The notes under the pieces are model-generated. The model made no database searches, was not told the DNA's origin, and saw only the letters and a program-made list of their open reading frames with translations. A program made the position numbers and the translations under genes. A stretch of 64,000 nt of DNA, from positions 360,742 to 424,741 of the forward strand of contig NW_019217991.1 of assembly GCF_002571385.2 (NCBI RefSeq). The letters are read 5' to 3'. Positions 21,473 through 60,589 of the stretch are shown piece after piece (position 1 is the first letter of the stretch; each line of letters opens with the position of its first letter). Source of the stretch: Stylophora pistillata. Lineage: Eukaryota.

Positions 21473-23066
21473 CTAAAGTGGGAGTTGAAAGAGTTCGGTT
21501 TCACCATAACTTAATGATACCCATACAGACTGGTGAGGATACACGCTGCGCACATTAGTATGTACCTGAGAAGTTTAATTTTTTTTTTCAATTTTTTGGG
21601 CTTTGATTCTTGATTCACATCCGGGCATCACACAATCCAGCAAAGTAATTAATATTGAAACTTTATATCTACATTCATCCTTTTAACTTTTTTTATTTTT
21701 TATTTTATTTTTTGGAGATGACGTTGCTGATGAAAGAAATCCTTGCACAAGATTCTCTAACGTTACACCTCGTTGCAGACCTGGAGTTAGCTTTTCTGTT
21801 TTAGTCAATGTGAAAAATATGGTCCCCACTGTTTCTTGGTTGAAATGGAATATCTATTCATGGGCTCTCTGTCACATTCGCTATGTTTGTTTTTGGATTT
21901 CCCAGGTCTTCCGATTGTTTAAGTACTGCAGGGAAAATCAAATGAAGTTTTAACAATGATGATAACTGAAAAATCTTAAAGCACTCCAGTTAATTGAGGT
22001 TGAAAGACAGTATTAAAATAATTCTGTTGCAAGTATTTGAAAGAACGTTTTAAACAACTATCAATTCTTTTTGGCCCTTAAAAGTAAGTAAAAAGTAAAA
22101 TTATGTTAAGCAGAAATAGTAAGGGAGAAACCTTACCTTTCGATTTGGTCCTCATTTTCTCCAAGGATACCTGTTGAGAACAGCTCTAAATTAGGTTCTA
22201 TAAAAAAAAAAAAACTTCTTCAACAAATTGACTCTCAATACAGACTGATAAAGGTTTTTGGGTAATTCTAACTTACATTTTGAGTTGAAACTTTCACGGA
22301 ATGTCTCTTCTTCAATCTAACCAAAGCTGCACGAACCTGGGACGAATTAGAGTGAAAGGTCACAAAAACTAAGAGATAATAAGTTATTTGAATTTACATG
22401 ATTTGGTCATCTTAATGTTAAGAAGATTTCATGCAATCGTTACAGTAACAATCTTATTTTAATCGTACCTTTTTGTAGCCAATTTCAATATTATTTCAGT
22501 TCGGAGGAGGAAGCAGTTTGGCTTGTGGTAAACTTAATTTGAATTTCTATTTTGTTTCAACGACGCAGTTATTCTTCATAAATGGAGATTCTTTAATCCG
22601 TTAGCTCACCTCTGTGTTGCCAATGCAGTGGAAACTAAAGATGAAGAAACCCTGAAAAAAAAGGAAAATATTTGAAGGGTGTCCCTAAGTGAAATCTCGG
22701 CAAGAAAATACGCAGATTCTTGCTTTCATTAATTAGTGTGACAGTCCTTGTGGTTTTCTTAAATAGACACGACAAAAAAATTAAATTGCAATAAGTTTAG
22801 CAGAACAGGTAAATATACAGGTAATATTTGACGTAAGGTTCCTAGGAGCATCAAACTGATGGACCCGGGTACACAGCTTCGTCACTTGCTGAACCCGTAA
22901 CTATACTTTGTTATCGATACTGGCGAAGTAATTTGGATATTAACACCATACTCGTATTCCCATAAGTTAAAAGACAAACCATCCATACATATAATAGCTT
23001 TCATCCTCTTTTTTTACCATTTATCTCTATACAGTGCATTTTTGGTATCCTCAAATGCTCCGCCTA

Positions 23067-24191
23067 TCAAAACCGATGTTATAAACATTTTTAACGATAA
23101 AAACTTGTTACGTAATCATTGTGTCATATCTGTTGGAGTTGAAACGTACCTGTGAGGAGTTAACTATAGCAAACAAGTACTGAAATGCAATGGTTCCAGA
23201 GTTGACGCTCAAAAGGCCAAAAAGCCACGATATTCCCAGCAATGGCATCAGGATCAAAGCTGCCTTCACACATGATCTAGAGGGCAGAATATATATAATA
23301 ATTCAGGAGACTAGTGACACATTGAGATCATACGTTGGGACGAGGGTGAAAAGTATGACGGGAAATCTTCACGAAATAAAATAAACACGTGAAACTCTTC
23401 ACCACGTAAATAATCAGATCAGAGATGGTACGCAAAGCTTGAATCGGTGGTTTTCAATGGCACAAGGTGTCACAAAATTGGGTATTTTACTCACGTACAT
23501 TTTGATTTGCTGTGGAAGAGCACTTGTCCTCTTTAGGAGTTAGCATCTTACGGCAGATCGTTAGTTTGTCAAAAACCGTTCGAAAAAATTCACTAACAAA
23601 GAAGATACCCCGCTTTTAAAGTGCACCTAAANTCAAAACCGATGTTATAAACATTTTTAACGATTAAAACTTGTTACTTAATCATTGTGTCATATCTGTT
23701 GGAGTTGAAACGTGCCTGTGAGGAGTTAACTATAGCAAACAAGTACTGAAATGCAATGGTTCCAGAGTTGACGCTCAAAAGGCCAAAAAGCCACGATATT
23801 CCCAGCAATGGCATCAGGATCAAAGCTGCCTTCACACATGATCTAGAGGGCAGAATATATATAATAATTCAGGAGACTAGTGACACATTGAGATCATACG
23901 TTGGGACGAGGGTGAAAAGTATGACGGGAATTCTTCACGAAATAAAATAAACACGTGAAACTCCTCACCACGTAAATAATCAGATCAGAGATGGTACGCA
24001 AAGCTTGAATCGGTGGTTTTCAATGGCACAAGGTGTCACAAAATTGGGTATTTTACTCACGTACATTTTAATTTGCTGTGGAAGACCACTTGTCCTCTTT
24101 AGGAGTTAGCATCTTACGGCAGATCGTTAGTTTACTTTAAAAGTGGGGTATCTTCTTTGTTAGTGAATTTTTTCGAACGGTTTTTGACAAA
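23067..24191. repeat. 566-bp-period duplication including the TM6 exon, joined at a single N
   Basis: 23067-23567 matches 23633-24133 with few substitutions; N at 23632; probably two haplotypes assembled in tandem. Confidence 0.9.
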
Positions 24192-27100
24192 TGTTGATTA
24201 GAAACGTCACCATCCAGCAACCAACCCGTGACTTACGGCCAAAATAAAAATTAAATGCAAGTTTTCAAAGTAGTTGTTTAAAATAACAAGGACTTACGGT
24301 TTTCTTAGTTAAGAATAAATAATACAAAACAAGTAATCATCACATTTACCAACAAGAAGAGCAATGCAACCTCATCAATGTAGTATTGTAAATAAAGTTT
24401 TACCTTAAGGAGTTTTTATGTGCGGCACTTTCGGCTACTTCAGTCAAGGAAACCAAAACTTTTATCGTCATTCCAAGCATGAAGAGATTAAACTTGGAAA
24501 GTAAATAGTGTTAGGATCAAAAATTACCAAAATATGTCTGGTCGTGGAAATACTCACCAAAATTATGGCTGCGACTGGTCCAACAAACGACCAAATGAGT
24601 CCCTTGTCCAATGATAACCAGCACCTAATGAAAGTTCACTTTATTATGAAAGTGTGATTTCGGTGCCTTATCGTTGCCTCATACGTCTCAATTCAAGGCC
24701 ACCTCTCTAGAAGGGTTAGATGATTCTGTCCCGTGGGGGCTGTGGTAGACAAGTTGAACTGTATTTATCATGACTTAAGAATTTTCTGAACTTGATCTGG
24801 TCACACCCAAATGGCTTGTTTGCCTCAAAGAAAAAAATTAGATTCAAGGTGCCGTAAAAATGGACGAGAGTCGGAGTTAGTGCTGCCTGATGAAAATACA
24901 GGTAAGTTGTTTTAAGTTCAGGTAGGATTTCCTCGGTCCCCAAAAGAAAATTGTATATAAAAATCCTATGTGTTTTGAAATAATATGAATTCGTTATCGA
25001 ACACCAATTTTAGCTTGAAGATCAGCAGTATTACATACGTATTTCCTGTACCATATCCTTCAGTTCTGGTAACGGCAGATATTCCAACAACTATGATAGG
25101 AGACCCTGAGAAAGCAATGAAACCAAAAAGAAGCTTCCATTTTGGATATTACGGCATCAGATTTAATTCCGACTTACCATTTTATTAACTGAGTAAAAGA
25201 TGTAAACAGACTACCCTTGTTGTATATTGTGCAGTACGATATCTATTAATGATATAGATAAATCTCATATGCCTTTTTTCTAAGATCTACTGTCTTTACT
25301 TTTGAATTTTCGCTGTTTTAACCGCTATTCTGCTTATGGTCCAATCTTCTTTTTTTTTAGTAGAGAGTAGAATTTGTTTGTCTGTAACGAGGACGTGACT
25401 TTTTCATCAATTCCTTTTTCTTTTAGGATGTAGATCTGACTAGTTTTCCCAAGAGAAAAAACGAACAGACTTGGTGAAGAAAAGGGGAAAAACGATTCAC
25501 GTTTTCCTTAGTCATAATTTTTTTTAGCTGAGAGGAAAAAAGTCTTCTTTCATGGAAAACGTCAGTGATATATTTTAAACAATCCGCTAAGATATACACG
25601 CATGAATGCATGTTTTGTCCAAAAGCTATAATATGTACTCACCCCAACAAAAAACAACGTAGTAGATGAATTTGAGATTTTGGAGGTTAAAGACAGTGAC
25701 GATCTTAAAATAAAGATGCAGTCCTTCTGCACTCATCCACATGAAGCTTGCGGTGTACAGGTAATGCAGGAGAACAGCTACTAATCTTCATAACCACTGG
25801 AAAATAAGATGATGATGAAAATAATTAATCCCATAACTTTGTGTGTATCAAGCTTTCGAGCATGTACGCATATAAAAAAGTGTGAATTATTTTGTGCTTT
25901 GTGTAAACTCTTCTGATGTTTTCGTCTGTTTGACGCAAAATTCACACATTATTGTGGAAGACAGAGTTACTTTTGGCGACTGAATGCCGAATGATTGTCC
26001 TGGATCTACAGCCAGAGAACGTTATCCTAGCTGTCTGAAGGACACGACTTTGCGTTGTGCCCGACTCTTTTTCAGTTATCATATGCTGTATTCAAAAATT
26101 ATGATATGCTTTAGTGGGAAAAAAAGAGTTTTGAAAAAGGCAATGTTTCAAAATTGTCGTAGGTGAAATCATTTTTTTCCCTCATTGAGAGAGATACATA
26201 GATCTTACCTTCCTTTCTGTCGCTGTTATTCCCACTAGAAAAACTACTTGAGCCATTGCCAAGGCAATGCATAAATGGAGATGAATTTGGTATCTGATGT
26301 CAGTTAACGACCTAAAAGAAGACAAATGCGAAAATGTTCATTCCACGTTCCGAAGACAGTCTGTGAAAGTATCTGACTAGAAAGTATTAATTTTCGCGAA
26401 AATATTTCGTCTGGTCGCTGATTGATTGCACGGAATTTTACTTTGTTACCATTCGCTCAGTGGAGGCTCAAGACCCTGCTCTTTTAAATGAAAGAAGTTC
26501 CAACCAGATTCTTATCATATTAAGAAAAAACAATTACGGAAACGTCCAAACCCGGCATTTTCATTATAATAGCTTGAGCTTGTATTATGCAATCTATTAT
26601 TGACCTATAGCAAAGAACTGAAGAAAAAAATCACAAACCTTAGACATAGAAATATCATTATGGCAGAGGCAAGAGCTACCAGTGATATTGTGCACCCAAT
26701 GTAAGTGATAATCCCCAGTGCAAACTCATCTTTTGGAGACACCTCAATAATAAAACGTTGCATAGATAAACAGGTGATAAATTATGAATAAATGAACATT
26801 GAAAAATAGTCTACAGAGTGCTATGATGATGTTTATCTTATTACGCCACATTACGCAGTACAGTTTGATTACAATTAACCAAACGTTATCGCTGAATTTT
26901 TAGAATGTCAATTTGTGAAAGATATTCTGATTATAGCTTGACTCGTTTTGCTTAACCAAGACAATTTCTGCTAGTTTCTCGAGAAACGCCAGCAGCGAGT
27001 AGTTTATAACGGTTTTAAGGGACAGTGGCGTGAGGTTAATATGGGTACGTTATGTTATGTTATGTTAGTGATTACGGAAATTTTAAACTTGAAATGAAAT

Positions 27101-27309
27101 AAAAAGAATATAATGCTATGATGGAATGGAAAAAAAAAAACGGCAATGAAACGCGAACAACCATTCATTTTCCCCTTGGTATCGGTTTATGCAACGCAAG
27201 GAAAACAAAAAGATGGGAATGGCGTGGATCATAACAACCGTTCAATAGAGAGCTTACAGGCAAAGGTTTCTTGGGAAATGTTGGCCTGTATTTGAGTTAA
27301 AGTACTTAC

Positions 27310-27427
27310 ATCGACTTCTGTGAAACTCATTATCACGGCAAAGCTTGTGAAATGATTTGTTGAACAAATAGTCCTCTCACTGTCACTCTTGATCAGAGAT
27401 AAGCCATTTGATGACCACTCTCCCTGC
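27310..27427 (-). CDS. GPS/Stachel exon of aGPCR gene A
   Basis: GEWSSNGLSLIKSDSERTICSTNHF-TSFAVIM between AG and GT splice sites. Confidence 0.9.
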
Positions 27428-30400
27428 CTTCGAAAACAATAGTAAGCGATTAGTGAAACCATAATAAGCGTACATGATCTAAACATCATGGTAAGTGCTT
27501 ACCCAGGAAGGGACTTCCAGTAGACACACTTTGAATTTCCTCCAATTTGTGTCTGTGGAATGGATTGATTTTTAAACTCAAAGTTAAATTTCGAATTTTT
27601 GCCAGAATAGAATAGCTAGAATTTTTGATATACACGTTTGCATACAAACCTTGCTACCAAAGGTCAAAAAGGCTTCCTTTCGAAGGAAAGAGAGAGGTCG
27701 TCCGTCAAAAAACACCAAAACTGAGATGATTTCTGAGTTGATAATAGCTTCTTGCAAATGCCTACTATATCAGAAGAATAGAATGCAAATAGCAGATGAT
27801 AACTTACTTTCACCATCAGTTATTGGTGATGATGGAGTAAGACAACTTGGATCCCTGCAACAATAACCTCCGACTACAATACATGTGTGTAATGAATACA
27901 TATCAATTGTAAAATAAAATCACAAAGCTTTTCTGTGGAATTGGTAAAGTGTAGAGATTTTGAAACCACCTTTAAGTATTTTTATTGTTCGATTCTGTTT
28001 TTAAATATTAATTTGTGGACCCATTATTTCGGTTGCGTCCATCCATGACAGAAAATGTTCGCGCTACTGTCTGTGGTTTCCTTTTTCTCCCTAAGATTGA
28101 TCTCGCTAGACAATTCAGGCTTGATTTAATTCACTCGTCTTGTATGTCCCTATTGGGTGTCTTGTTTCTCAGCTGCTAACAGAACATGTGATCCATGAGA
28201 AAGGATATGTAAACAAAAATGGTGGATTTTCCTCACCCATCTATTTTCGCGGAGGTTGTCCTGTTTGTGAAGTGGGATGTTTGATTTTTGTAGATTACCA
28301 TGCTAACAACAAGGCGACCTATCATCAAACGTATAACGAAGAAGAGCAAAGTTATTACCAAGAAAATGTTAACGACAGCATGGATGTTTGACACTCCCGG
28401 CACAACACTTGCATATACAACTGTTTAGCGAAATTTCACTGAACAGTTCGCAATGCTGTTACCGGTGACCATACTCACACCTCTGCGTTGAGAACTTCAA
28501 TCCCTTGGACAGTGTTTTCAAAGATTCTGTCGTGGTTTTCAGTCGCAGTATTTTTGGCAGAATGGAAGTTTACAAACTATGATATTTTGGTATAGAGTGA
28601 GTCCTGCAGCGAATAATTGACCTCCTACCTTCTTTTGTTTCTTTAGTGATGTCCATGGGTAATCCGCTTGCTTGAAGAGTTATTAAAGGTGTTGACCGAG
28701 GTTGTTTGTTAGAATTGGGAATAGTCACATTGCTGTTTGGATTGACGTATTGCATTATTGAATGTATTTCTAAGAAGAAAAAGGAGTTTCCAGAGTGATA
28801 TGATAAATCAACTTCAGAATACAAGCCAAGTGTTTAAGACAACTGCACAAGATAATTGAGATGATTAAACACTGTAAACTCTGAGGTCTTAGCTGGCATG
28901 ATGTTGGGGAATATCCCTTTTCCAGTCGAAAATCTTTTTTTTCCTAGTTGATTAGAGGATATTTGATATGCCTTTCGTTCAAAAAGAAAGTTATTTCTCA
29001 CCTAGGTTTCTCTTGATTAACATCACGCTTTGGTTGGTGGCAGACGTATAATTCATTGCTAAGGAAGCTGTCTTTTCCACAACTTCCACAAGATCCATGA
29101 ACTGTTAGTTGGAAGAAAGTTAATGAATGATCTTTAGCTCCTATGGCCTTTGAGTTTTAGCCGACGTTTAAAAATTTGAAATTGAAGTTGGTAATATTAT
29201 ATTCCATTGCTCAACATGTACATTAATTCTATCACATCTAGAGAACCTCGATGGTACAGAAGTTTATTGAATTGTCTTTTTCCCGTGTGTTTATCGCAGA
29301 AATTGAAACACGGGAACCCTTACGAACCTCTGGGCCATAAACTATTCGCTCCTTTTTCGTGAGCTAACTATTTCGAAAGAAATCTCGAGCCAGTATAGCT
29401 GTGTATCCCTTTCAATTACTTTACCCTTAACCTCAGGGAGAAAAATTCATTGGGACGGTACAGTAGACTATGACATCTTGATTTTCTGAACCTGAGACAC
29501 GAAATTCATATAGATCAGGTTGAATTGATCTTTTGTGTCCAAGATCAGGTTAATATGAGTTGAGACATAAATATTCATTGCAAATTTAAGAAACTGATAT
29601 GTTCCTGAAGAATTTGCCCCGTACATGTATTTACTTAAAGTTTAAAGATGAAAGAGTGCTGACAACATAGAGCAATTCATCCTGGACTACCTTGAATACT
29701 CGTATTCATTTAAATAACTGCTCAGAGTGCTATGGACATATTTGATTAAAATTACAGCTTCCGTGATTCTTTGAGGACTGGTTTACATGCTGCACTAAAC
29801 GAAACAAACTTCTTACTTAGACGTAGTAACTTGTTAATCAATGGTTCAGTTTGTTTCAATGAATCTTAATCAAATCCAATATTAATCAACACGTTACTGT
29901 GTTTGCTTAAGTTATGTGTTCAAGATGCGTGGTCAAATAAGTAAATTATTTGCTGTTCAGAAATTATAATATCCTCACCATTCCGCTGCTGCGCCATACT
30001 GCTGTGTGTTTGTAGTCCAAAAGTTCATCAATAGTGTTGAGTAAATTAGAAATGAGCTTCTAAGAAAAATAAAAGCAATGGTGAAAACTTCAGTTAAGGG
30101 ATTTTTGCGGCTTAGACAATCAACTTATATGTACATGTACATAGATTGTAAAAACGCGCATAAATCTGATCTAGTTTTTTATTACCTTAATTTCTTTTTC
30201 TTATATTTTAGTTTACACCGCAAGAATGAAGTTTTTCACCAATATAAATATGGCAACAGAAGAACTAAGATACATGGTCTAAACTACACAAAATGATTTT
30301 AATTAGCCATCGTGGGGTGAAATGAAGAAAAAAATGATGATATGAAGTAAAATGCGCAAGTAAAAGAATTTTTAAAAAACTCGAGTGCTACTTTGAAATA

Positions 30401-35800: not shown

Positions 35801-37113
35801 TGTTAATATCCTGTCGGCCGATCACTTTTTATAGATCTACGAATTTTAGGTGATCATGATATACCTTAATCTTAGACGGGAAGATCTCAGATGCCTGAGC
35901 TATATTATTACGCCGAGGCTTTAACGCAAGTATTCACTATACCTGTGCTTCCTCCCAAATAGTGGTCGGTATCTTTGAGACCGTATGGCTTGCTGTACGA
36001 ATACTTTCTCTATCCTTTCCCGTAACCACCATGACCAGCCCCTCCTGCTTCTTTGTTGTAATACAATCCCCGTCCCGGTCCTCCGTAAGGATTACCTGCA
36101 GGACGAGGTAAGAGACAAGTGTTCAACCAAATCGGCACAAAGTAATAGAAATATATAAATCCATTTTAGCTTGTACAGAAAAACCCACAGAATATAATTC
36201 CATGGCCTTTGGAAACGTGCTGAAACAGGTCTAAGATAAAACTCTTTTGCCTCACAATCGGAATATCGATCGTAAAAGGTTCTTTATTAGTTTTTTTTGT
36301 ACCAAGTTAAAACAGCTTTTTCATATAGGTGTAAAGAGAAAATCAAATGTGCATGCATGGAACATAAACTTAATACATTATTTTGTTACATAACATTTTT
36401 TTCATATCGAATAATACAATTTGAATATTACTCCTTAGACTTAAACAGTAGATTAACAGATATAAAGGTAATAACAAACGTAAACGGAGATAAACTTGTA
36501 AATCTTTTAGCTTAGTTTGGTAACGACTTTAAAGCTATTCAGCATTCTTGGGTTAAAAAAAGCATAATTTACAATAGAGTCTTAAAAGGCTGAGATTGTC
36601 GTAGCTTTCATCAAAGAAGAAGAGAAAAATGCTACATAGAAACATGATCAGCGCAAAGGAGGAGAAGAAAGTTGTGATGAAGAATATCAGGCTTTCCTAG
36701 TTTTCTTTCTCTAAAAGACAAATGTACTTTTCTACACTAACCATTTGCACCAATTGCAGTGACAAAACCTCCAACTAATCTTGTTTCTTTATGTGACGAA
36801 GGCACAGCATTTACATCAACTTTCAAAACACCGTTCAAATCTATAGTTATATTATCTCCGGTCAACGATAGGGCGTTCGTCCCTCTTAAGTGAACAAGAT
36901 TTGTTATGACTATGTTGCCGTCGAATTTGAAGCGAGCAACTTGATAATTCCATAGTGAACCATTAAAAGGAAAATAATGATTTGATGAGCAGCCAAGGTG
37001 TGTGAATAAACGGCTGCCATCGTGGCATGAGGTCACTGTGATGGACGGCGTTCTTGTTTCGTTTCCTGTATCGATTGACAAACACTCCAACACTGAGTTG
37101 TAGGTTAACTCAC
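32820..37113 (-). CDS. Exons encoding the Gly-rich N-terminal domain of aGPCR gene A
   Basis: VARFKFDG..HLRGTNALSL..GGF..GGPGRG..GGAGHGGYG..YG..YLGGSTG..GFGGQAIELNATGKIEMRGSIEANA..GGNSGGLVRLVAETV..CGGGSGGIVQI. Confidence 0.8.
35055..35150 (-). mobile_element. Degenerate Penelope-like pseudo-LTR relic
   Basis: GTGAGTGTAGTCTTGAGAAGGACTGTTGT..ACATTTCGACAATC..GCGGAAACCATC resembles the antisense of a PLE hammerhead; the CTGANGA core is lost. Confidence 0.45.
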
Positions 37114-49311: not shown

Positions 49312-52260
49312 CAACATAATCTGTAATAAGATATATTTATTTCCGTACATTGTTTGGGTTATAGCTGATTCAATGCATGGTATAATTTTATTCCTGAATT
49401 TACTTAAATTATGACTAACTTTTCAAGATTTTGCATTGGTATGTCAATAATTTTATTTGGAAAAATTATTACTTATTATTTCGGCGCTGTTGATATTTCA
49501 GAGACGTACAAGGTGTGACGAAAAATTAAGGAATATACTCGGCCACATGTTGGCGAGTTCATGGCATTAATGGCTCGGGTCCGTGTAACACTTACCATCT
49601 CAGCTGAACAATTCCAGCTTTCATAATGAACGAATTCAGTAAGGTTTTTACCCTGGTGAAAAATAGAAATGACTGTCACAAGAAAAGCATGAACGTTCAA
49701 TCCACTTAGGCCACGCGTGCCACATCTCGTCTCATTAAGTTCATAATTGTTCAGCGGTGTTCTTGCTCTCTGCTTTGACTTTAGTCTGTCGGGCTTGTTG
49801 CAGAAGTGATTAATATATTTACGTTAACCTCAACCAATAATAGATGATGATACTCCGAAAACAAATTTTCAAACCTTCTTGCGCATTCTCTTTATAGGTT
49901 TAAAAACCCTCAAATACTCTGTAAAACGGTCTCAGAGACGTGATGCTATTTTCAGTTTTTTTTTGTTCACAGTCCTCATACATGTACAAATTTTGAGAAT
50001 TCCAGAGTTTGCCACGTGAGTAATAGTGAGGTAAACAACTTCACGTGAAAGTGAAAGTTGCGGATGGAGATAGAATAAGGCAAACTTACAAGAGTCGTCA
50101 CTTTGCCGATAATGGTGGACGAGGCATTTCTTCTGTTACCTGTAGGGTCAAAAGACAGCCATGATAACGATATCTTCCCGAAAGTTAATTGTGAATCCGA
50201 AAGATGTCTCCATAGTTTTGATAGAAAGAGCTTTCCACTTGCTTTTACCACAAGAACATTCATTTTGACATTCCTTCCTTTACACAAGCAAACAAACAAA
50301 GTAAACCGCAATTGAACTTAGACTGGCTAAACGCAAGTTCCAAGATGTTTAGTAGTGAACAACCCGACAGGTGTTGAAAGGTAAGGGATTTTATCCCTAT
50401 CGGTGACTCGGGTTTTTTTGTTTGTCGCAGGCTTGTTAGAAATACACTTAAACATCTGTTTTTGAAAGTACACATAATCTGTATCATATAGATATCAAAG
50501 CTCTCTTGCCTTTATCAATCACATATAAAATAACTGAGGCAGCGGATAAGTTTTAAACTCGAGTTTAGAATGTCACGATTGGAATGTTAAGACAATTATC
50601 TGATTAAACACAATTACCAAACTCACTCTTACTTGAAGGAAACGTGCTTGCTGTTGAACTTTGTGTCACTGGAAAGTTAGACAAATATTGTGAGATAAAT
50701 GATTAGTGCTCGATTTTTCCAGCTCACAAACGATTCGCAGCGCCGACTTAGAGAAGCGTAATGAAAGTTTATTTACATGAGTTGTCAGGTTGGTCTTTGA
50801 TATAATGTTGTACTCCGGCATTAAGAGATCTTAAAATACGGTGTCTTAGACAACTATACTTAGTATTTATTGTTGTTTCCCCCCTCTAGACAGGTTGATT
50901 TTCCTTTTTTTTTTTTGAAAAAATGAGCACACATGATTGAAACTAGAGAGGGTGGAGAAAAAATAAAGGGTAGCTCGTCTGACCTCACTTAATGGCAACT
51001 GAGTCATTAAGTTCACTTAGCAAGCATGGAAAATGTTCTTACCAGGAGGCAAGGAGGTTGTTCTGGTGGTCTGTGTGATTTTCTCTGAATATAAGATCAG
51101 TTTTCAAAGAATTAGCACAGTAACGGAATTAATAATGAAATGTCCCGCGTGAACTAGCTTGATAAGCATTTTATGGCACTCATTCCTTAAGGGTTAAATC
51201 TACTAACTCATAGAAAGCCAGAAAATGAAAAGTGATCAATGTATTCTCTTTCTATGACATAGAATATACCAAGTTTGGAATATTTTTGACAATTTTCCAT
51301 GCTTCCCCCTTGAGTAAGTATCTTCAAGAATCCAAACTAGGCTTCCAAGAGATAGCCGCTGGACTGGACTAGCTTTGATTGAAAATACATTATTACCTAC
51401 CGGTACTATGGCAGGTTTGGAGGTGAGTTTTGTTACGCCTTCCTGTGTAACGATAATATGTCCCCAACATCCTTTTATCTCCAGGACCAAAAGTTTGCTG
51501 TGAGATGTTTAAGGCGTACCATTCCCACTCGCAATGCCATTTTTTAATGTTGTTGGTTTGCATAGAAGAGACATTGCGCGCTCCAAAGATTTCAAGGCAC
51601 GATGCTACAGTAATACATTATTAGATTAAAATTTTTGATGACGAATATTTAATTCATTGATATCTTAATTGCATGTTAAGTTTGACTTTTTGGGCATGTG
51701 CATGAAACCTCAACCTAAATTCTTTCGTTGATGAACAGAACAATTTCTGAGTGATTTGCTTCCAGTTTCATTTTGAAGTTCTCCTCTGTTCATTGCAGTA
51801 AGTCGCTCATAGACTGAAGCTTATTCTTGATCAGTGACACAATTTGAAGTTTTATCACCTATGAACAATTAAGCGGAAAAGCTTCAAGATTATTTCTAGT
51901 TCAATTTATAGTGGCTTTTATTGCCGAAATTGTCGTTTTAGATGAACGAAACGCCCCAGATAAGTATAAAACTTGAACTAAATAATAAGAAAAGCAGTAA
52001 TTGTTTAGTGGCATTAACAATGTGTGGTATCAAATAGTTGGTTTCTCTTTTTAATGATTAAATACCTGTGAGACTGCTATTTTCCTTTTTAAAAGAAACC
52101 TGACAGCACATTCTGGTTGGGTGTAATGTTGAATTTCCTTCTTGAGATCCTTTGCAACTAATGAATATGTATTGAGAACGACCTGTGCAATTCCAGTTTA
52201 TTTCGCTGTAGAATTCAGAACTGCAGTTACTCCAGTATTTCCTTGATTGACTACAAAATA
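40798..52260 (-). CDS. Adhesion GPCR gene B (Cys/Trp ectodomain, S/T stalk, GAIN/GPS, 7TM); 5' end undefined
   Basis: Exons 52066-52260, 51401-51604, short S/T exons ~51043-51084 and ~50633-50668, GAIN exons ~50150-46758 (incl. 47443-47533 with GC donor), GPS 46236-46371, TM exons ~45515-45618, ~44367-44468 (RYRIHIHLCVAL), ~43637-43790 (EVCIAVAVMLHYFFTASFVWMCIEA), ~43239-43305, ~42888-42954 (CWLSLEG..WAF), ~42427-42515, ~42048-42174 (LFPLLGLSWFFG), ~41624-41665 (GVFILLFHC), ~41038-41102; last exon approximate. A candidate exon at ~51718-51858 may contain TAA. Confidence 0.85.
44497..45410 (-). mobile_element. 5'-truncated L2 LINE in an intron of gene B, with inverted 5' segment
   Basis: SSKVKMLRRITFL..TIYSKTVIPSV..VWGSC; RPRTEQGRRSFKHRAVIAWNSLP; 3' AATAAA plus (ATGT)n tail at ~44497-44526. 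Confidence 0.85.
46236..46371 (-). CDS. GPS/Stachel exon of aGPCR gene B
   Basis: PFWSDKGMTF..FTSCLTNHL-TSFAVLI, with canonical HL/T cleavage triad. Confidence 0.92.
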
Positions 52261-53260: not shown

Positions 53261-56200
53261 TCGGATTAGTATTTATAAAGGAAGTTTTGAGTCTTACAGA
53301 AGAGCAAACATTAAAAGAGAACATCGGCGTCAGGTGACAGATAATGCATTAACGGGATCTAATGCGACTTCACCATCTCCGGTGCACTTGATCATTAAAG
53401 TAATTTGTATACATGTAAATGGTGTTTCAAAGAAATAAGCTTGAAGTTTCGTGATCATTTCAGGTTTTTAATGACGGCTGTTACCATCTGTGCGTCTCAG
53501 GTACTGATCGATTTTTTCGAATTCAATATTTTCTTGACAGTATAGTTTGGGTTGATCAAAGTAAGTTTGATGAGATGCTTTGTAACAAAAAGTCACTAAA
53601 ACATGACTCGTATCTAAACGAGGTGATAATTTTTTTCAATGGTACGAATTGTTCAAAATTTTCTTAGAAATTAAAGGTGCGAAATTTAACTCAAGATTGA
53701 AGTGACTCTTCAACCTCTCATATGTCATGGTTCGTTTTACCGTTGGTTCTCAATTGCTGTTGTCTTGATATTTTGAGTTCAAAAGAACTGAATCAGAAAA
53801 AGTTACTCAAGAAAATTTTTTCCCAGACATGCTTATCAGAGAAAATACTACCGTATTAGATTAATTATTGATGCTAAAAGGGCGGACATTTCAACTATTT
53901 TTGATCATCACTGAAAAAATTTTCTTTTACAAATGAAAGGGAGTGCCATCCTAGGTAGCCATGGGAGCGTGACGCTCGTCTCTGTGAAGGGACAATCATC
54001 TTTGGGATACGGCAACATTGTTACTGCTTGTTGCATTAACTGGCCTCACGAAATGTTCACAAGTCATTACTAAAATTTTTATTTCCCTCCATTTTTTTCT
54101 GTTGGTAGAACTTGGTGTCAGGAGAAAGTCGGTTTGACTTAATTAGTTAAAGAAATGGGACAAATTATTTACTACTGACTATTTCATGGATGAACGAGAA
54201 ATATTGCTAATTGCTGTGCCGGTGTTTGAATGGGTGTTCATCCGCAATATAAGTTTTCATTATTCTACATGTGACGGCGAAGAAAGAATGAGTTAACAAA
54301 CATGATATTTTAATCTTCGCCAACTTGTTTGATAGGTATTCGACGTTTCAACCGCATCTCTTTAAGATCCTTTAACACTTACCCACGAAATATGTTTTGC
54401 AGAGAATAAAACATTTCGGTCAAGGTGGAAACTTAAGAAGATGATATGAACTTTCTGATCAAAATAATATTCAATCATTTTCAGCTGGTTTATGCGTCGC
54501 TTCGGCGGGAATATGTTTTCGAGCATAAGCAACAGAAATTACCGTCAAAACGTGTAGGTAAGAATTTCGATTTATTTCAGTTAAACTAAGAACTCAGCTC
54601 CATCATTTTCCAAATTAAATTGACAGCAAGTAGTTTTGTATATATTTTCCTGAAGACCACAATACATATTTGATGAGTTCATTTTGGAGAAATAATTCAT
54701 TCATACACAATTTTTTTTTAAATTTTAAATTTGCGATTATACAAACACCTTGACGATGGAGGGAAGTTGTTCAATGAGATCAAGAAAAAAAATAATTTTG
54801 GTGTTGTATGGTACACCTAATAAAAGATTACCTGTAGATATTGTCTCCTCTTTCTGTTGAAGCGAGCTTGAAATCTAGAGAGGAAACATTTGCGTTAGCT
54901 CAGAGATAAGTCAAGCTAAGCGTGCGGTGAAAAGATTAAGAGACATTTACCTCAACTGTGAACACCAGCAACAGATCCACTAAAAAAAGCCATCCGTTAG
55001 AATTCATTTTATCCCAAGGGCCGAAGCAATTTTGCAATTATCAAGTGACTGGGGGGAGACGCTTTTACAACCGCTTTCCTTGCTCCGTTGACATTTTCTC
55101 CAGATCATTACTAAACAGAAATTCTAACCTATCGGAAATTTAACCAATTGTTCACCTGTCAGGTTCTCTCGCCTGACTCGATGCTTGAAGCTAATCAGAC
55201 ACAGGTTTCTGCAAGGAAAGTACCTAAGGTTGTGAAAATTGTACGTTTGGGGTCTTTTAGTCGACCACCAGTTTCGCGGAGTTTAAACATAGCTCGAGAG
55301 AGTTAGCTATCTTTAAAGGGGTAAGCCAGCTGTTCACAATTTATCTCCATCTTTATTGATGTGGAAGCGTCGAGAGATATCAAAATGCCACGTACGTCTC
55401 TGACAATTAAGATTAAAACATTTCCTTCATATTGATTTTTCTTCCCCTCTCTTACTATGTCATCGAGGAAAACAGTGGAAGTGAAATTTCAAAAAAATTG
55501 TAAGAAATGGAGCACGTTTTTAAATCTAGGGTTTGCTAGCTATCGATGGACCTTATTTTAGAATTGATCTTCCATTTTACTTTAAGTACAAATGGTGCAT
55601 CAATAAAAATTCACAAAAAAAGCATTCAGCTGCAATTGAACGAGCTATCTGTCCTATAGCTAAGTTTTTCAAACAATTTCAAAACATGATCCAGCTTCGA
55701 ACTTAAAGTCATCGCACTCGCGTGCTAGCATGTCCAGTGACATTAATTTGGTATCTTCTTTTGATGGACAGAACTGGCAGCTAGAGAAGCATTTGTTGAT
55801 ATATTTAGTAGGCTATTCACCGGTACGTTGCTTTGTTTTTCTTTTGGATGGGTGATTAAAACTTGCTATCACGACATTGCCAGCTCCTCTTTGTTTCTTT
55901 TTAGTCAGCAGATTTAGATTCTGAAGACAGGAAATTCCAAAGACAAACAATTTTCAGCTCGGCCACAAGCCTTAGACTGAGGACTTCCTGCCTCTTGTAC
56001 TATTTAAGAAAGCATGATTAACAAAGTGACACTGAGGATAAAACTTTATGTGTGTGACCGAGTTGTTTTCCATAAAATTACAGGCAATATTTTGCAAATT
56101 ATTCAAAACCTGGATTTGACATCTTCCATAGCATCGAAGAAGACCTGTTTATGCTAAACGAGAATTTAGATTCAAGCTTATTGCCTTCAGGCTTCAATTA

Positions 56201-59200
56201 AACACGTACAGTCCAAAACTTTTTATCATCCTCTTTACAAGTTTTTGCCTGTTACTGTATATGTTACTACGCGAGTAGCACAATACTGATGTTTTGAATT
56301 TGTTTTCTGATTCCACAAAGATAAGCGTATTGTCTCAATTCTTCCTTCCGTCTCACTTGATTTTCTCATTTTCCTTGTTTTATTTATTTGCCTCACCCAC
56401 TCAATTACTTCGTGAACCATTCGGGTGTCACAAAATCTATACCCTTTGAAGGTGACTTTCAATTTTCCCTTATTTCTATTTATTTCTTTCATCTTCTCTC
56501 TCATCAAATGGTAATGATGATGCAATGCAAGTTATTTTCATTTATTTCCATCTACTGTACGTACTAAATTATTTATGTCAATGTGTGCTGATAATTTCCC
56601 ATCAGTTTAAATATTAACTTGACTTGACGTGTTCCTACCAACGTTATTGGTTTTCACCCTGTTTGAAAGACGTTTGCATATCCGGTTATTATTACGTTGG
56701 TTTATTAAACTCATATATTTGTGATTAAATTTTGTCTTTTAGATGCTCAAGAATTGCACATGCACATAAACAGTAATCTACAGTACCTTTATTGATTTAA
56801 ACTGAACCTCGTTTGTATTCGATGTTGTGTCCTTTGCATGTGCAGGAGTGCTCAGCTACTTTCCTGGGTATTTCATTTCCATGCACTTTGCCTCCGTCTT
56901 TTTTTAACAATGGAAACACCCGTACCCCACTTTGCATTTCAGCCTGTGTTGCGTTCATCCCATTATTTTGGCCAAGAATTTACAACCTTGTAATCTCAAA
57001 GCAGTCATTTTATTTAGGGTAACCATGTTTTCAAAGTTTCGAGCTAAAGTTTCGCCTGGGTTTATATTTCTCGTATTATTGGCAGCAACTTTTAGGAAAT
57101 ACCTAGGACACATTTGAGTTTTCATATGCTAAACGGGAAGTTCTTCTATGAGTAACTCAAAAGGCTGATTTCATTAATTTACTAGGCTCGGCTCTTGCGA
57201 AATTCTGGTGTCTTACACGTGCAATTTGCAATACGTGGAATTTAGAGAGTTCTTTCTGGTTTTTGCTTAACATTGCAACGCATCACCCTTAACAGAAGCC
57301 GTTTGGACAAACGTGCAAAAATGATAAATAAAGGTGGTGTTCTTTTACTAATTTAAAAAAATTGGAGCAATTTCTATCTTCTTTTTTTTCGGAAATGTTT
57401 CTTATTTACTTTTACAGATGATCTATTCATTCATTCTACCCGCTTATGATCATTCAATGTTTCCCGTCTGATTGGCGGCATCTTTATTGAGAGTTTTTGT
57501 TGATCGATTACGAATATTGTTCTCTGAACGTAGACTTCCTTCTTCAATGCATTCAGCCAACAAAGCTGCAGCAAAATCTTGCTCTTTTAAGGAAATGGGA
57601 CAATACAAGTTCAAATGTTATTATCAACTTCCATTGTAAACTGATTTCACTGATGCGGCAGTCTCAAAACCTATATTGCAAGAAATGGTCTATTGTAGAC
57701 ATTGTGAAAATTCCTTTCTGATTCTATCAGGACGAAGTCATTCAAAATCGTTTTAAAGTCTTATTATTGTTCTCTAACTTTCCAACCTCTATTTACTTAA
57801 TGTAAAAGGCGTTAAAAGCATTTCCTTTAGAGGTCGAAATTCAACTAAGTTCATGAATACCATTTCCTAAAACGATGTTTTGCTTTGTCGACAAACACTT
57901 TTATGAAACAAGGTTATGATTAAAAAGAAACTTAAATGCAAGAGATCATTTAGAAAACGCCAGTTACATCTTCAAAAATTAGCGGTGGGAATGTGTAAAA
58001 TAAATTGCATGACGAATTCAAATTTGTTTGCCAGGAGTTTTCGGAATAATCTACCCATTGTAAGTGGTATTTATATGGTTCAAGCTATAGAAAGCCTCGC
58101 AGCATTCTTCAAATCCCGATCTGTCTTTGAAGAATCCGTTAAAGTTAATTCTTAACGAGATTCGCAGATGTCGAGCGATTGAATAGTGGTACGCAAGGGT
58201 ATTTCCTGACCATGTAACAGCATTCATAAAAATTTTTTTTTCACCTTCCGATGAAGAGGTTCTCACAAAGTGACAATGGCGAATCCCCCTTTTTCTCCGT
58301 TTTTTTTAGTCATCGGTTTGCTTTTTATTGTGACAACCCCCTTAATTAATCGTTACCACGGTTCATTTCAAAGGCTGAGAGCTTTGAAAGCTTTGAAAAC
58401 TTATGATAACTCAAAAAAGTTTGTAACAATAGGTCATAATAGCTGTTTCATAATCATTTCGTTTTCCAATCCTAAGGAAACGCTGAAGATCAAGTAATCT
58501 TTTGCTTAGAAACGACACATGAATTCATTCAAAGGCAATAAGATAGGTTCCCATTAACTTCTTGAACGCTTACCTGATCAAAGAACTTTTGCCTATTCTT
58601 CTGATAAAATTTGCCATCACCTAAAGGGAAAGTTAATGAAGAGTTTTTCCATGATAATGACATAAAGGCAAACGTTCCAGCGTCTGCATTGGCTGAAATC
58701 AAGCCGAGTAACTTCTAACAATGGAGACACTTGGAATTGATTGCATAAAGGTGAAATTGTTTTTTGTGTGCTAGTAGTAAGTTATCAAATAATTTCTCAT
58801 GCATTTGGAACAAAATTAGGGCTTGTAAATCCTCAGACTACGAATTGCAACGTGCATTCGACCTTCGAGGTCGCGCAATTACTTTATTTATTTGGAATGT
58901 GCTCAAGTTGCACTCGAAAAAATTTCCCACAATTCTTATTCTGCTGGTGTACCTGCAGGGGTTTTACTCATCTTTTGGCTCAGAAAGCAGAGTAGAAATT
59001 GGCGTAGAGTGTTAGGTGTACGTGATTGAAGTTGCTTCAGTTGATGCCTTTCTTAAGTACAATACGGGAGTCTAAGTGTTGGAGACCTAGTCCATAGATC
59101 CAAATAGTTTCCCCGAATTTGGTTGCGATCCCTCTATTCCTCCAAAGGTTTCCCTTGAAAAAGCAGGCCTTTTTGGTCATTCAGTAGTCAAACGGTACCT

Positions 59201-59242
59201 ACAAAGGTTCGTTAACGAAAAACTGGTTTCAACTGCACTCAC

Positions 59243-60236
59243 AACCGTGCGTAGTTAACGGAGTAGAACTTCCGTTGCAACGAGTTTGAAACTGCATATG
59301 TCCCTGAATGTCCACCACCAGACGAAAACCATTCCACTGACACCGCCACTTATCCACTGATTCAACAGATAGTGATCTGTTTCCCCAATGGGTGAAGGTC
59401 GATATGCAGGGAACTAGAAAAATGATGAATACTGTTGAACTATTTATGGGACTATTTCGGCTTTTCATTGATTGTTTTTACTTTGTTTCATTAAAAAAAC
59501 AGATTATGTTCAGTTTGTTGAATAGGCTTTGGCTGTAGTATTCTCCTTTTGCAGGAGGCTACGTTTCAGTAGATTCATATGTAACTGCTGACAGGAAATT
59601 GTGCTAAATACACAAATCAGACTGACTGGAAAGTCCAAAATAAAGAGATTAAGTTTATATGGTGTTGGCTCTATGGAATAGGGGTTTAGTGTTCGATGGT
59701 TAAATTATAATGGGGTTCAGTTTTTTTCGAGAAAACATGTCAAATTTTTTCAGGACTTTGAAAGGCTGTGCGTAATAAAGAGAGCGGCTCAAATCAATAC
59801 TGTTAAATTCCCACGCACGAGATTACTGTGTGATGAACGTCCTCCCTTGGGGTGGGATGGGTGGGTGTCACAGGACCCCATTTAAACCAGCTATTAGCTG
59901 AAATGGGCTACCCGGTATAAATATTCGTAAAAAAAATTAAAATACGCGGAGATGCACATTTAGTAGTAATGCGAGGTCCAACTGTACTTCATAGATATCA
60001 CTCTATTTTAACAAACTAGCAGGAAAATATGTTACTTTTCCAACCTCCCTGATGTACTTCTTCTCTGCCACCGTTTTCAGTTATTTGTACATCACAGCAA
60101 GCTTGAGAAGCTTGATTTCTTCTTTTTGTTTCAATACCGGTGCAGTTTAATCTTATTATTCCAAATCTTCCTCGGCAAGTCCAGGAAATAATACCAAGTA
60201 CATCTGACTCGGGTAGTTCGTTTTCTGCACAGCTTG
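59243..60236 (-). CDS. Two phase-1 exons paralogous to the gene B Cys/Trp ectodomain exons
   Basis: 60045-60236 ASC..ISWTCRGRFGIIRLNCTG..ACCDVQI vs 52066-52260 VFC..INWNCTGRSQYIFISCKG..MCCQVSF; 59243-59413 VPCISTF..VDKWRCQWNGFRL vs 51401-51604 ASCLEIF..IKKWHCEWEWYAL. Confidence 0.65.
59803..59925 (+). mobile_element. SINE fragment (shared core, different tail)
   Basis: TTCCCACGCACGAGATTACTGTGTGATG..GGGGTGGGATGGGTGGG matches the core of the SINEs at 6035 and 10060. Confidence 0.75.
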
Positions 60237-60542
60237 CTGCGAGGTATAAGGCATTCCTCGGTAATCTGACCAAACATTTTTTTTAATATTTTGTGTTCAC
60301 AGCAACAGCAATAATCTTTAAAGATCGATTTTGCATAAAAAAAAAACAATACAACACTTTTTTATTGATCACTCCTATTAGGCTTTTTCAGAATCAATGA
60401 ACATAGCAAGAATAGTAAATAATATGTATATATATATATATATAGGAAGTCTGCAAGTCGATTTTCGCGTGGAACAGTGCTCAATACGTTGAAGCAGAGC
60501 AGAATAAATATTATGAGAGGAAAAAAGGACGTAACTACATTT

Positions 60543-60583: not shown

Positions 60584-60589
60584 TTTAAA

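What the first reader, a model, noticed from the sequence alone, without database searches (positions are those of the whole stretch)
21858..60236. Adhesion-GPCR array: one GAIN/7TM chassis, unrelated phase-1 ectodomain cassettes
Seen: genes A and B have matching intron positions and phases from late GAIN through TM7 (e.g. 154-bp TM3 exons, 127-bp TM6 exons) and the same reduced GPS, yet wholly different N-termini built mostly from symmetric phase 1-1 exons (Gly-rich domain in A, Cys/Trp modules in B). I recognise neither as a standard aGPCR adhesion fold (EGF, Ig, LRR, CUB, TSP1, lectin). Inference: a lineage-specific receptor family diversifying by ectodomain exon shuffling with birth-and-death turnover, possibly sensory or immune.
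Basis: partly seen in the sequence, partly recalled or inferred. Interest (0 to 1): 0.75.

Follow-up and report, generated by a model that had tools for sequence, protein, structure and literature searches.

The report
Coral adhesion-GPCR pair, two unrelated ectodomains
Two neighbouring coral genes encode adhesion-type G-protein-coupled receptors that share one exon framework but carry unrelated outer parts that match no catalogued domain family, one predicted to be a beta-helix; this is a real but fairly ordinary example of how this receptor family diversifies.

Summary
The window is Stylophora pistillata. Both genes lie on the minus strand, and 47 exons have checked splice sites and a consistent phase chain. 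From the pre-GPS exon to TM7, 9 of 10 exon pairs have identical lengths and all 10 share phases. Both GPS motifs keep 2 of the usual 4 cysteines. In each gene the ectodomain sits between phase-1 introns.

Gene A carries a Gly-rich domain plus a mucin stalk. The domain is predicted at moderate confidence to be a right-handed beta-helix, nearest in fold to bacterial two-partner-secretion domains. RNA contigs splice it on to the GAIN exons. Gene B carries two copies of a two-exon, eight-Cys module of unknown fold. Neither ectodomain matches Pfam or NCBIfam.

- A and B are about 41-45% identical and are not sister genes.
- The intron positions are family-wide in this genome.
- The B-A pair is conserved in Pocillopora and Porites, so there is no rapid turnover.
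- A third, beta-helix-type member lies just outside the window.

Gene A has two in-frame stops in the reference. One reads GAG in two other samples. The other could not be tested.

The scan has noted a similar array elsewhere in this genome (s1-779108).

The parts
38176..38220 (-). Gene A exon 0a: ATG and first half of the signal peptide (MAPFGASAFLFVLVE)
   Evidence: Translation. It matches the start of RefSeq XP_022794235.1 (P0001).
38001..38046 (-). Gene A exon 0b: second half of the leader (TILFWRVTNACPVPN), phase 0 to 1
   Evidence: The same exon is used as the acceptor in the Pocillopora B-A read-through models.
36742..37113 (-). Gene A exon A1, 372 bp, phase 1-1: N-terminal part of the predicted beta-helix ectodomain
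   Evidence: The A1-A2 splice joint is seen in RNA contigs. Its words are held by 7 polyA RNA runs.
35943..36095 (-). Gene A exon A2, 153 bp, phase 1-1: Gly-rich (GGPGRG..GGAGHGG..LGGSTG). It contains the reference TAG.
   Evidence: Joints 36095/36742 and 34715/35943.
36010..36012 (-). In-frame TAG in exon A2 of the reference. Two other samples read GAG (Glu) and Pocillopora has Lys.
   Evidence: In one search table 3, plus-strand 36012 is A>C in X6 (RNA, depth 4.5) and X5 (genomic, depth 135). RefSeq XP_022794235.1 ends here.
34638..34715 (-). Gene A exon A4, 78 bp, phase 1-1 (AFTGSNAPGFGGQAIELNATGKIEM)
   Evidence: joints.
33149..33258 (-). Gene A exon A5, 110 bp, phase 1-0 (..KIGGNSGGLVRLVAET)
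   Evidence: joints.
32820..33003 (-). Gene A exon A6, 184 bp, phase 0-1 (..CGGGSGGIVQII..GFLYIK): end of the predicted beta-helix
   Evidence: joints 33003/33149 and 32476/32820.
32141..32476 (-). Gene A exon A7, 336 bp, phase 1-1: Ser/Thr-rich mucin-like stalk
   Evidence: A 13-letter loose end in X6 joins its 3' end to exon A8 (table 7).
27310..31488 (-). Gene A GAIN/GPS exons A8-A16: 31488-31421, 31076-30924, 30059-29979, 29101-29002, 28769-28629, 28318-28237, 27761-27650, 27552-27503, 27427-27310
   Evidence: Pfam GPS E 3.8e-08. The A8-A9 splice is shown by loose ends of 152-223 letters.
22610..26742 (-). Gene A 7TM exons: TM1 26742-26639, TM2 26311-26209, TM3 25796-25643, TM4 25105-25039, TM5a 24624-24558, TM5b 24492-24404, TM6 23276-23150, TM7 22651-22610
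   Evidence: Pfam 7tm_2.
25788..25790 (-). In-frame TGA at the codon of the conserved TM3 Cys (WL*RLVAV). Gene B and all orthologues seen have Cys here.
   Evidence: Not tested in other individuals. No SECIS match.
21858..22336 (-). Gene A C-terminal exons 22336-22277, 22170-22137 and 21925-21858 (stop TGA 21860-21858)
   Evidence: Read and matched to P0012.
23631..24135 (-). Second copy of a tandem duplicate of about 505 bp (offset 566) that starts at the single N (23632). It repeats the TM6 exon with a GC donor and is probably two haplotypes joined by the assembler.
60045..60236 (-). Gene B exon B1, 192 bp, phase 1-1: first half of Cys/Trp module 1
   Evidence: Similar to B4: 29% identity, E 3e-05.
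59243..59413 (-). Gene B exon B2, 171 bp, phase 1-1: second half of module 1 (..KWRCQWNGFRL..)
   Evidence: Similar to B5: 26% identity, E 1e-05.
58574..58620 (-). Gene B linker exon B3, 47 bp, phase 1-0
54832..54874 (-). Gene B linker exon B3b, 43 bp, phase 0-1
   Evidence: It fits the Pocillopora protein segment SSPQQKEDIIST. It gave no HSP.
52066..52260 (-). Gene B exon B4, 195 bp, phase 1-1: first half of module 2
51401..51604 (-). Gene B exon B5, 204 bp, phase 1-1: second half of module 2 (..KWHCEWEWYAL..)
50633..51084 (-). Gene B Ser/Thr-rich linker exons B6 (51084-51043) and B7 (50668-50633), both phase 1-1
   Evidence: They fit the Pocillopora protein.
46236..50139 (-). Gene B GAIN/GPS exons B8-B15: 50139-50090, 49652-49596, 48493-48388, 48085-47966, 47533-47443 (GC donor), 47141-47039, 46807-46758, 46371-46236
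   Evidence: Pfam GPS E 4.6e-07.
41624..45618 (-). Gene B 7TM exons: 45618-45515, 44468-44366, 43790-43637, 43305-43239, 42955-42889, 42514-42426, 42174-42048, 41665-41624
   Evidence: Pfam 7tm_2 E 1.3e-15.
41037..41102 (-). Gene B C-terminal exon (VRSSIKQIKDRHSLESSIRHEQ), phase 0-0. Its donor is the one spliced to gene A's exon 0b in the Pocillopora read-through models. B's true last exon was not determined.

Best explanation
The stretch holds two of three tandem, same-strand adhesion GPCR genes of the coral Stylophora pistillata. Along the minus strand the order is C (outside the window), B, A.

Each gene has the same layout:
- a signal peptide in two small exons, the second ending in phase 1;
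- an ectodomain cassette that begins and ends in phase 1;
- a GAIN domain with a two-Cys GPS and an H-L/F-T|S cleavage motif followed by a TSFAV(I/L) tethered-agonist strand;
- a secretin-type 7TM encoded by eight exons.

Gene A's cassette is a Gly-rich domain of about 320 residues, predicted to be a right-handed parallel beta-helix, followed by a mucin-like stalk. Gene B's cassette is two diverged copies of a two-exon, eight-Cys, Trp-containing module of unknown, probably all-beta fold, followed by a short Ser/Thr linker.

The B-A pair is old. It is kept in the same order in Pocillopora and Porites, so it predates the split of the two main stony-coral clades. It is under conservation rather than rapid turnover.

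The inferred mode of action is the usual one for the family and was not shown here. The ectodomain binds an extracellular partner, which for a beta-helix is most plausibly a glycan or a surface polymer. Force or binding transmitted through the stalk frees or repositions the tethered agonist, and the 7TM then signals through G proteins.

The different ectodomains were most likely placed into one framework by exon shuffling of phase-1 modules long ago. Gene duplication followed, since A, C and a paralogue on contig C199 all carry the beta-helix type.

The two stop codons in gene A belong to the reference sequence, either as a null allele or as errors. At least one of them is not fixed in the species.
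For: Species and orthologues: exon A1 is 99% identical to S. pistillata XP_022794235.1, and the 90% cluster of its close homologue P0002 holds P. verrucosa adhesion-GPCR models. The 1916-aa P. verrucosa model maps exon by exon onto B and then A.

Framework: splice sites, lengths and phases are.

Family: Pfam 7tm_2 and GPS. A profile search of PDB sequences hits ADGRL3 at 1e-88 and ADGRD1 at 1e-82 over GAIN plus 7TM.

Transcripts: five GT..AG joints link A1-A2-A4-A5-A6-A7, and loose ends link A7-A8-A9, in polyA RNA contigs. Seven RNA runs hold exon A1.

B module duplication.

Conservation: A-type genes are found in P. meandrina, Oculina patagonica and Porites lutea, and the Porites model also begins with a B-type N-terminus and a first 7TM.

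Other beta-helix paralogues: gene C and the C199 gene with WSC.

Stop codon: TAG reads GAG in X6 and X5.
Against: - The structure model rests on 7 sequences. Residues 110-190 are below pLDDT 50, and Foldseek found no PDB match at E<=0.001.
- No sequence family links the domain to any known beta-helix family.
- Gene B's N-terminus-to-GAIN splicing was not checked with reads in this species. It rests on the P. verrucosa RefSeq models and on consistent phases.
- The fold of B's module is unknown (AF2 pLDDT 39).
- The TGA in TM3 of A was not tested in any other sample. The reference also carries a second stop, so a real null allele or early pseudogenisation is not excluded.
- X6 supports GAG with one contig at depth 4.5, and contigs drop minor alleles.
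- No ligand, cleavage or signalling data exist.
- Own-genome searches found the cassette exons only in their own genes, so shuffling between unrelated genes was not seen.
Confidence: 0.72

Rival explanations
1. Gene A is a dying copy. The array evolves by birth and death, and A has begun to decay in S. pistillata.
For: The reference has two in-frame stops, TAG in exon A2 and TGA at the conserved TM3 Cys codon. The RefSeq model stops at the TAG, and the original annotation skips the GPS and TM1-TM3 exons as well as both TM5 exons.
Against: - TAG reads GAG in a genomic run (depth 135) and in an RNA run of other samples.
- The gene is transcribed and correctly spliced.
- A's exons are as similar to Pocillopora as B's are, for example TM2 100%, TM4 91% and A1 87.5%.
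- All 23 exons keep their splice sites and phase chain, with no frameshift.
Confidence: 0.2
2. The N-terminal exons are separate genes that were wrongly joined to the receptor bodies, either as small secreted proteins upstream of truncated receptors or through read-through artefacts.
For: RefSeq lists a 182-aa protein for A's N-terminus and a 392-aa protein for the Pocillopora B N-terminus. Several database models in this region are clearly read-through fusions of B and A.
Against: - For A, RNA contigs carry the joints from A1 through the mucin exon into GAIN exons A8-A9.
- The 182-aa model simply ends at the reference TAG.
- The 392-aa Pocillopora model ends in what looks like intron read-through.
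- The phases are continuous in both genes.
Confidence: 0.05
3. No exon shuffling took place. B's Cys/Trp modules and A's Gly-rich domain are extremely diverged forms of one ancestral ectodomain inherited with the gene.
For: Both cassettes sit at the same place between the same phase-1 boundaries. A and B are old, distant paralogues, so there has been time for divergence.
Against: - Composition and predicted secondary structure differ completely: Gly-rich with few Cys, against eight Cys per module.
- Exon numbers and sizes differ.
- Other paralogues on the same framework carry C-type lectin plus PA14, or WSC, which shows that cassettes do differ by kind within the family.
Confidence: 0.05

Closest known systems
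Adhesion GPCRs of the latrophilin (ADGRL) and ADGRD1/GPR133 type
   Same: Secretin-type 7TM, a GAIN domain with GPS directly before TM1, an H-L-T|S-type cleavage motif and a TxFAVLM-like tethered agonist. These are the best PDB sequence matches: ADGRL3 at 1e-88 and ADGRD1 at 1e-82. The databases name the genes 'GPR133' and 'ADGRL3-like'.
   Different: The ectodomains have none of the lectin, olfactomedin, HormR or pentraxin domains (Pfam). The GPS keeps 2 of 4 Cys. B's GAIN is short.
Bacterial two-partner-secretion (TpsA) secretion domains: HMW1, HxuA, EtpA, FHA
   Different: No sequence similarity was detected (Pfam, NCBIfam, PDB sequences). Here the domain is an animal membrane-receptor ectodomain encoded by spliced exons. 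A shared fold shows neither common origin nor shared function.
Gut-fungal class C GPCRs with pectin-lyase-fold ectodomains (PMC5168858, passages read)
   Same: A GPCR carries a beta-helix-type extracellular domain, which the paper's authors suggest binds carbohydrate.
   Different: They belong to a different GPCR class (C, not adhesion/B2) and a different kingdom. Their domains are recognised by InterPro pectin-lyase signatures, whereas this one is not recognised by Pfam.
   Same: The same exon framework carries different ectodomains. I saw C-type lectin plus PA14 upstream of the C86 paralogue, and Gly-rich modules plus WSC upstream of the C199 paralogue.
   Different: This array combines two beta-helix-type members with one Cys/Trp-module member, and the B-A pair has orthologues in the same order in other coral genera.

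Membership tests
Adhesion GPCR (class B2) | Seven-transmembrane domain of the secretin family (Pfam PF00002) | tested here: met
   Single exons of A and B hit 7tm_2 (E 4.2e-11 and 1.3e-15). The Pocillopora B+A model gives two 7tm_2 stretches at E 2.6e-119.
Adhesion GPCR (class B2) | GAIN domain with GPS motif directly N-terminal to TM1 | tested here: met
   Pfam GPS in both genes. The profile match to ADGRL3 and ADGRD1 chains spans GAIN plus 7TM. The GPS exon is followed by the TM1 exon.
Adhesion GPCR (class B2) | H-L-T/S cleavage tripeptide and hydrophobic tethered-agonist strand | tested here: met
   B has NHLT|SFAVLI. A has NHFT|SFAVIM, with Phe in place of Leu. Actual cleavage was not tested.
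Adhesion GPCR (class B2) | Four conserved GPS cysteines (two disulfides), typical but not universal | tested here: not met
   A and B keep the first and third Cys only. The second position is Leu or Met and the fourth is Thr. Gene C and the C350 paralogue show the same C-x-T pattern, while the C199 and C86 paralogues have C-x-C.
Adhesion GPCR (class B2) | Autoproteolysis and tethered-agonist activation | not testable with these tools
   This needs expression and cleavage or signalling assays.
TpsA secretion domain (Pfam Haemagg_act and relatives) | Sequence membership in the family | tested here: not met
   No Pfam family other than 7tm_2 and GPS, plus one chance-level HEAT hit, at E<=0.1. No NCBIfam family at E<=1.
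TpsA secretion domain (Pfam Haemagg_act and relatives) | Right-handed parallel beta-helix fold | tested here: inconclusive
ALK/LTK-type glycine-rich domain (Pfam PF12810; name recalled) | Sequence membership in the family | tested here: not met
   No such hit in the Pfam scans of exons or of full-length orthologues.
Exon-shuffled class 1-1 modules (Patthy's rule; recalled) | Module bounded by phase-1 introns on both sides | tested here: met
   Both cassettes as a whole, and 10 of 14 cassette exons, are 1-1. The leader ends in phase 1 and the GAIN region begins in phase 1 in both genes.
Exon-shuffled class 1-1 modules (Patthy's rule; recalled) | The same module occurs in otherwise unrelated genes | tested here: inconclusive
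   Own-genome searches with exons A1, A6 and B2 found only the exons themselves. Local comparison found diverged beta-helix modules in two other adhesion-GPCR paralogues, not in unrelated genes.

The most novel reading that the evidence does not exclude
Stony corals have a conserved subfamily of adhesion GPCRs whose ligand-binding part is a right-handed beta-helix. This fold is otherwise typical of bacterial secreted adhesins, phage tailspikes and polysaccharide lyases, and it forms a domain family not yet catalogued. Beside it sits a receptor with a second uncatalogued eight-Cys module. On this reading the beta-helix receptors sense glycans or microbial or algal surfaces, which would make them candidate receptors for settlement cues, symbionts or pathogens.
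Probability: 0.3. Interest if true: 0.65.

Novelty: new variant of a known kind. Interest (0 to 1): 0.4.

Why it matters
It is already in print that adhesion GPCRs diversify by swapping extracellular domains (PMC12716839, Discussion passage read), so the array itself adds little.

Two things are worth keeping.

First, two ectodomain types match no Pfam or NCBIfam family, yet both are conserved across coral genera. One is predicted to be a beta-helix. In my four literature searches I found no paper describing that fold on an adhesion GPCR. If the beta-helix binds glycans, these receptors are concrete candidates for how corals sense surfaces, microbes or symbionts. The coral-genome literature leaves that question open for its expanded GPCR families (PMC10236652, passage read).

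Second, the reference genome carries stop codons in gene A that at least one other individual lacks. Annotations built on the reference split or truncate this gene.

Tried and rejected
Ideas rejected after testing:
- Selenocysteine at the TGA. Rfam found no family, SECIS included, in the whole window at gathering scores, or in 19000-22000 at E<=1. Orthologues use Cys.
- A candidate exon at 35321-35240 with good splice sites and phase 1-1. It is absent from the Pocillopora protein, and the RNA joint goes straight from A2 to A4. It overlaps a very high-copy repeat.
- An apparent exon 'GGYCCRDPSC' at about 27870-27800, used in the old PFX23422.1 model. The phases do not fit, and the orthologue uses 28318-28237 instead.

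Searches that gave nothing useful:
- Pfam on single ectodomain exons.
- Foldseek against PDB.
- ESM Atlas: unnamed clusters for A, nothing for B.
- phmmer of the B N-terminus against PDB sequences, 0 hits at E<=10.
- AlphaFold2 of the B N-terminus, pLDDT 39, so I did not use it for fold search.
- A mixed alignment of beta-helix pieces (A3), too gappy to serve as a profile. I therefore did not scan bacterial genomes for relatives, and the question of a microbial origin stays open.

Attempts to test the TGA in other individuals:
- A protein search with the TM3 open frame returned only other species, all with W-[LI]-C.
- An exact 30-base search of JGI metagenome contigs found nothing.

Limits of the paralogue tree:
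- It is a neighbour-joining tree on 204 pooled columns anchored on gene B.
- Only 9 of 27 other loci had 100 or more columns and were kept. The other 18 were dropped, as were HSPs with E>0.01.
- It is poorly resolved and shows only that A+B is not supported.

Printing and filtering in two scripts:
- In one search I printed only the rows for query P0012, not those for P0029 and P0030.
- In one search I kept only rows on L034 and L036 with E<0.5.

Supplementary files of the papers were closed. The domain tables of PMC12716839 might list cnidarian ectodomains that I could not see.


Full report
WHAT THE SEQUENCE IS

The 129-residue open frame of the first large ectodomain exon of gene A (36740-37126, minus strand) was scored against 1.84 billion representative proteins. 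Nine proteins reached E<=0.001. The best, at 99% identity, is Stylophora pistillata XP_022794235.1. It shares its 90% cluster with PFX23422.1, named 'putative G-protein coupled receptor 133'. [quoted passage not shown] The window is contig C208:360742-424741 of the genome in hand.

A 1916-residue P. verrucosa RefSeq model (P0012) is a read-through of two receptors. In tblastn it maps exon by exon first onto gene B and then onto gene A of the window, both on the minus strand.

CHECK OF THE OBSERVATION

Pfam finds GPS and 7tm_2 in single exons of both genes. I placed 23 exons of A and 24 of B by reading the sequence against the orthologue map. A script then checked them:
- All 47 have AG acceptors.
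- 46 have GT donors and one (B12) has a GC donor.
- The phases chain without a break.

From the exon before the GPS to TM7, the A/B lengths are 50/50, 118/136, 104/104, 103/103, 154/154, 67/67, 67/67, 89/89, 127/127 and 42/42 bp, with identical phases.
- The whole GAIN region has the same phase series, with one extra 0-0 exon in A.
- Both genes split the signal peptide over two small exons, the second ending in phase 1.

Both GPS motifs keep only the first and third of the usual four cysteines.

The ectodomain exons are mostly 1-1. That holds for 4 of 6 in A and 6 of 8 in B, and in each gene the other two form a 1-0 plus 0-1 pair.

B's two leader exons lie beyond the window, at L033 625-578 and 490-439, which is about 64439-64625 in window numbering.

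TRANSCRIPTS

Twenty of 24 listed public runs hold words of exon A1. Seven of these are polyA RNA libraries from four studies.

I laid three RNA runs and one genomic-looking run on 31250-37138. The RNA contigs show five joints with CT..AC ends, which are GT..AG on the minus strand. All five fall exactly at my exon ends:
- A1>A2 in X6, X9 and X11
- A2>A4 in X6
- A4>A5 in X6
- A5>A6 in X6
- A6>A7 in X9 and X11

Loose ends carry the end of A7 onto A8 (13 letters, X6) and the start of A9 after A8 (152-223 letters, all three RNA runs). X9 and X11 give identical figures and may be one data set filed twice.

So for gene A the N-terminal exons are spliced through the mucin exon into the GAIN exons. Its model rests on the Pocillopora RefSeq proteins and on its clean phase chain.

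THE STOPS IN GENE A

The reference has TAG at 36012-36010 in exon A2 and TGA at 25790-25788 in the TM3 exon. The TGA sits at the codon where gene B and every orthologue seen have the conserved Cys. The RefSeq 182-residue protein ends at the TAG.

In one search the plus-strand base 36012 is C, not A, in two runs:
- X5, which covers introns and exons evenly at depth about 135-190 and is therefore genomic
- X6, an RNA run, in one contig at depth 4.5

This turns TAG into GAG. X9 and X11 do not cover the site. The TAG is therefore a reference allele or an error and is not fixed.

The TGA could not be tested:
- A protein search found only other species.
- An exact DNA search of metagenome contigs found nothing.
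- A selenocysteine reading has no support.

Gene A is as similar to its Pocillopora orthologue as gene B is to its own. It has no frameshift and no lost splice site. I therefore give a dying pseudogene 0.2.

WHAT THE ECTODOMAINS ARE

Pfam finds nothing but 7tm_2 and GPS in the full-length Pocillopora protein, and nothing in the B N-terminus or in A's 182-residue piece. NCBIfam finds nothing.

Gene B. Its cassette is two copies of a two-exon module:
- B1 resembles B4 (29% identity, E 3e-05).
- B2 resembles B5 (26% identity, E 1e-05).
- Each module has eight Cys and a W-x-C-x-W motif.

Its AlphaFold2 model is unusable (pLDDT 39). PDB sequences and the Atlas give nothing.

HOW A AND B RELATE, AND HOW SPECIAL THE FRAMEWORK IS

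The TM3 exon of B matches 95 places in this genome at E<=0.001, out of 132 candidates. Among the 30 best loci, each about 3.1 kb long so that exons out of range count as misses:
- The TM3 acceptor lies at the same position in 29.
- The 103-bp TM2 exon fits in 20.
- The 104-bp TM1 exon fits in 15.
- The full 154-bp TM3 exon fits in 7.

The intron positions are therefore a family trait.

A and B share 109 of 263 residues over nine equal-length exons and 45% over 203 anchored columns. A shares 56% with a paralogue on C86 and 51% with one on C199. A+B grouped in 12 of 200 bootstrap replicates of a rough distance tree.

A third receptor, gene C, lies about 19 kb beyond the window on the same strand. 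It has the same ectodomain plan as A (N-terminal domain, Gly-rich exons, mucin stalk) at about 30% identity. The C199 paralogue has Gly-rich modules of the same kind plus a WSC domain. The C86 paralogue has C-type lectin and PA14 exons upstream.

Own-genome searches with exons A1, A6 and B2 found only the exons themselves. These searches also missed gene C, so their reach is short.

AGE

A-type receptors with this ectodomain occur in P. meandrina (96% identity), Oculina patagonica (57%) and Porites lutea (41%). The Porites model, like the Pocillopora ones, starts with a B-type N-terminus and 7TM and runs on into the A type. The B-A neighbourhood is therefore shared by distant stony corals. This argues against rapid lineage-specific turnover of these two genes.

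MECHANISM

Shown here:
- gene structure
- family membership
- splicing of gene A
- conservation across corals

Inferred:
- The receptors work as other adhesion GPCRs do. The ectodomain engages a partner, the stalk and GAIN transmit force or binding, and the TSFAV strand acts as tethered agonist on the 7TM.
- The beta-helix most plausibly binds a glycan or surface polymer. This is by analogy with the fold's usual partners and with fungal class C GPCRs that carry pectin-lyase-fold ectodomains (PMC5168858, passages read).

Nothing here tests an immune, symbiotic or sensory role.

COMPARISON WITH WHAT IS KNOWN

That adhesion GPCRs were shaped by extensive domain shuffling is stated in print (PMC12716839, passages read). 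That coral genomes amplify receptor families by tandem duplication is also in print (PMC10236652, passages read). For the other titles listed I saw only the search listings. None describes a beta-helix ectodomain on an adhesion GPCR, which holds for this library only.

The scan itself has already followed up a similar array on another piece of this genome (s1-779108), and it has noted the C199 receptor (s1-773239).

VERDICT

- The array is an ordinary, old member of a large coral receptor expansion.
- The two uncatalogued ectodomain types, one probably a beta-helix, are the part worth following.

Noticed in passing
window 23065-23569 and 23631-24135: A tandem duplicate of about 505 bp at offset 566, with about seven mismatches, begins right at the single N (23632) and repeats gene A's TM6 exon. 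The upstream copy has a GC instead of a GT donor. It looks like two haplotypes joined in tandem at an assembly gap.
   Followed up: partly
window 34993-35189: A very high-copy element lies in gene A's A2-A4 intron. Summed contig depth is about 53,600 in the genomic run X5 and 1,475-3,970 in the RNA runs, against about 135-190 in the flanks.
   Followed up: no
window 41037 (donor) and 38046 (acceptor); proteins P0012-P0014, P0016, P0017, P0030: Database models of Pocillopora verrucosa and Porites lutea fuse receptor B to receptor A. B's phase-0 donor after ..RHEQ is spliced to the phase-0 acceptor of A's second leader exon. The same two sites exist in this window. Whether this is real read-through transcription or a modelling artefact is open.
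   Followed up: partly
L033 439-625 (about 64439-64625 in window numbering): Gene B's two signal-peptide exons lie outside the window, 4.2 kb upstream of exon B1. The first has a GC donor. The intron between them and B1 holds the 777-base N run and the palindrome at about 60365-60780.
   Followed up: partly
window 60365-60780: This perfect palindrome in gene B's first long intron was noted by another reader as carrying hammerhead ribozymes. Rfam gave no match at gathering scores anywhere in the window. I did not search it at a laxer threshold.
   Followed up: partly
G000:C208 about 439000-454000 (L035, L034): The third array member, gene C, is a beta-helix-type adhesion GPCR on the same strand. 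One of its ectodomain introns holds a 228-residue open frame that looks like the tail of a retrotransposon protein (L034 7302-7985).
   Followed up: partly
L042 6710-8494 (G000:C199): A 595-residue intronless open frame that looks like a rhodopsin-type GPCR sits on the same strand among the ectodomain exons of the C199 adhesion GPCR. I did not scan it against Pfam.
   Followed up: no
window 44764-45356: Open frames in gene B's TM1-TM2 intron resemble the same retrotransposon tail as in gene C's intron (shared ..RSFxxRxxxxWNxLP.. pattern, by eye).
   Followed up: no
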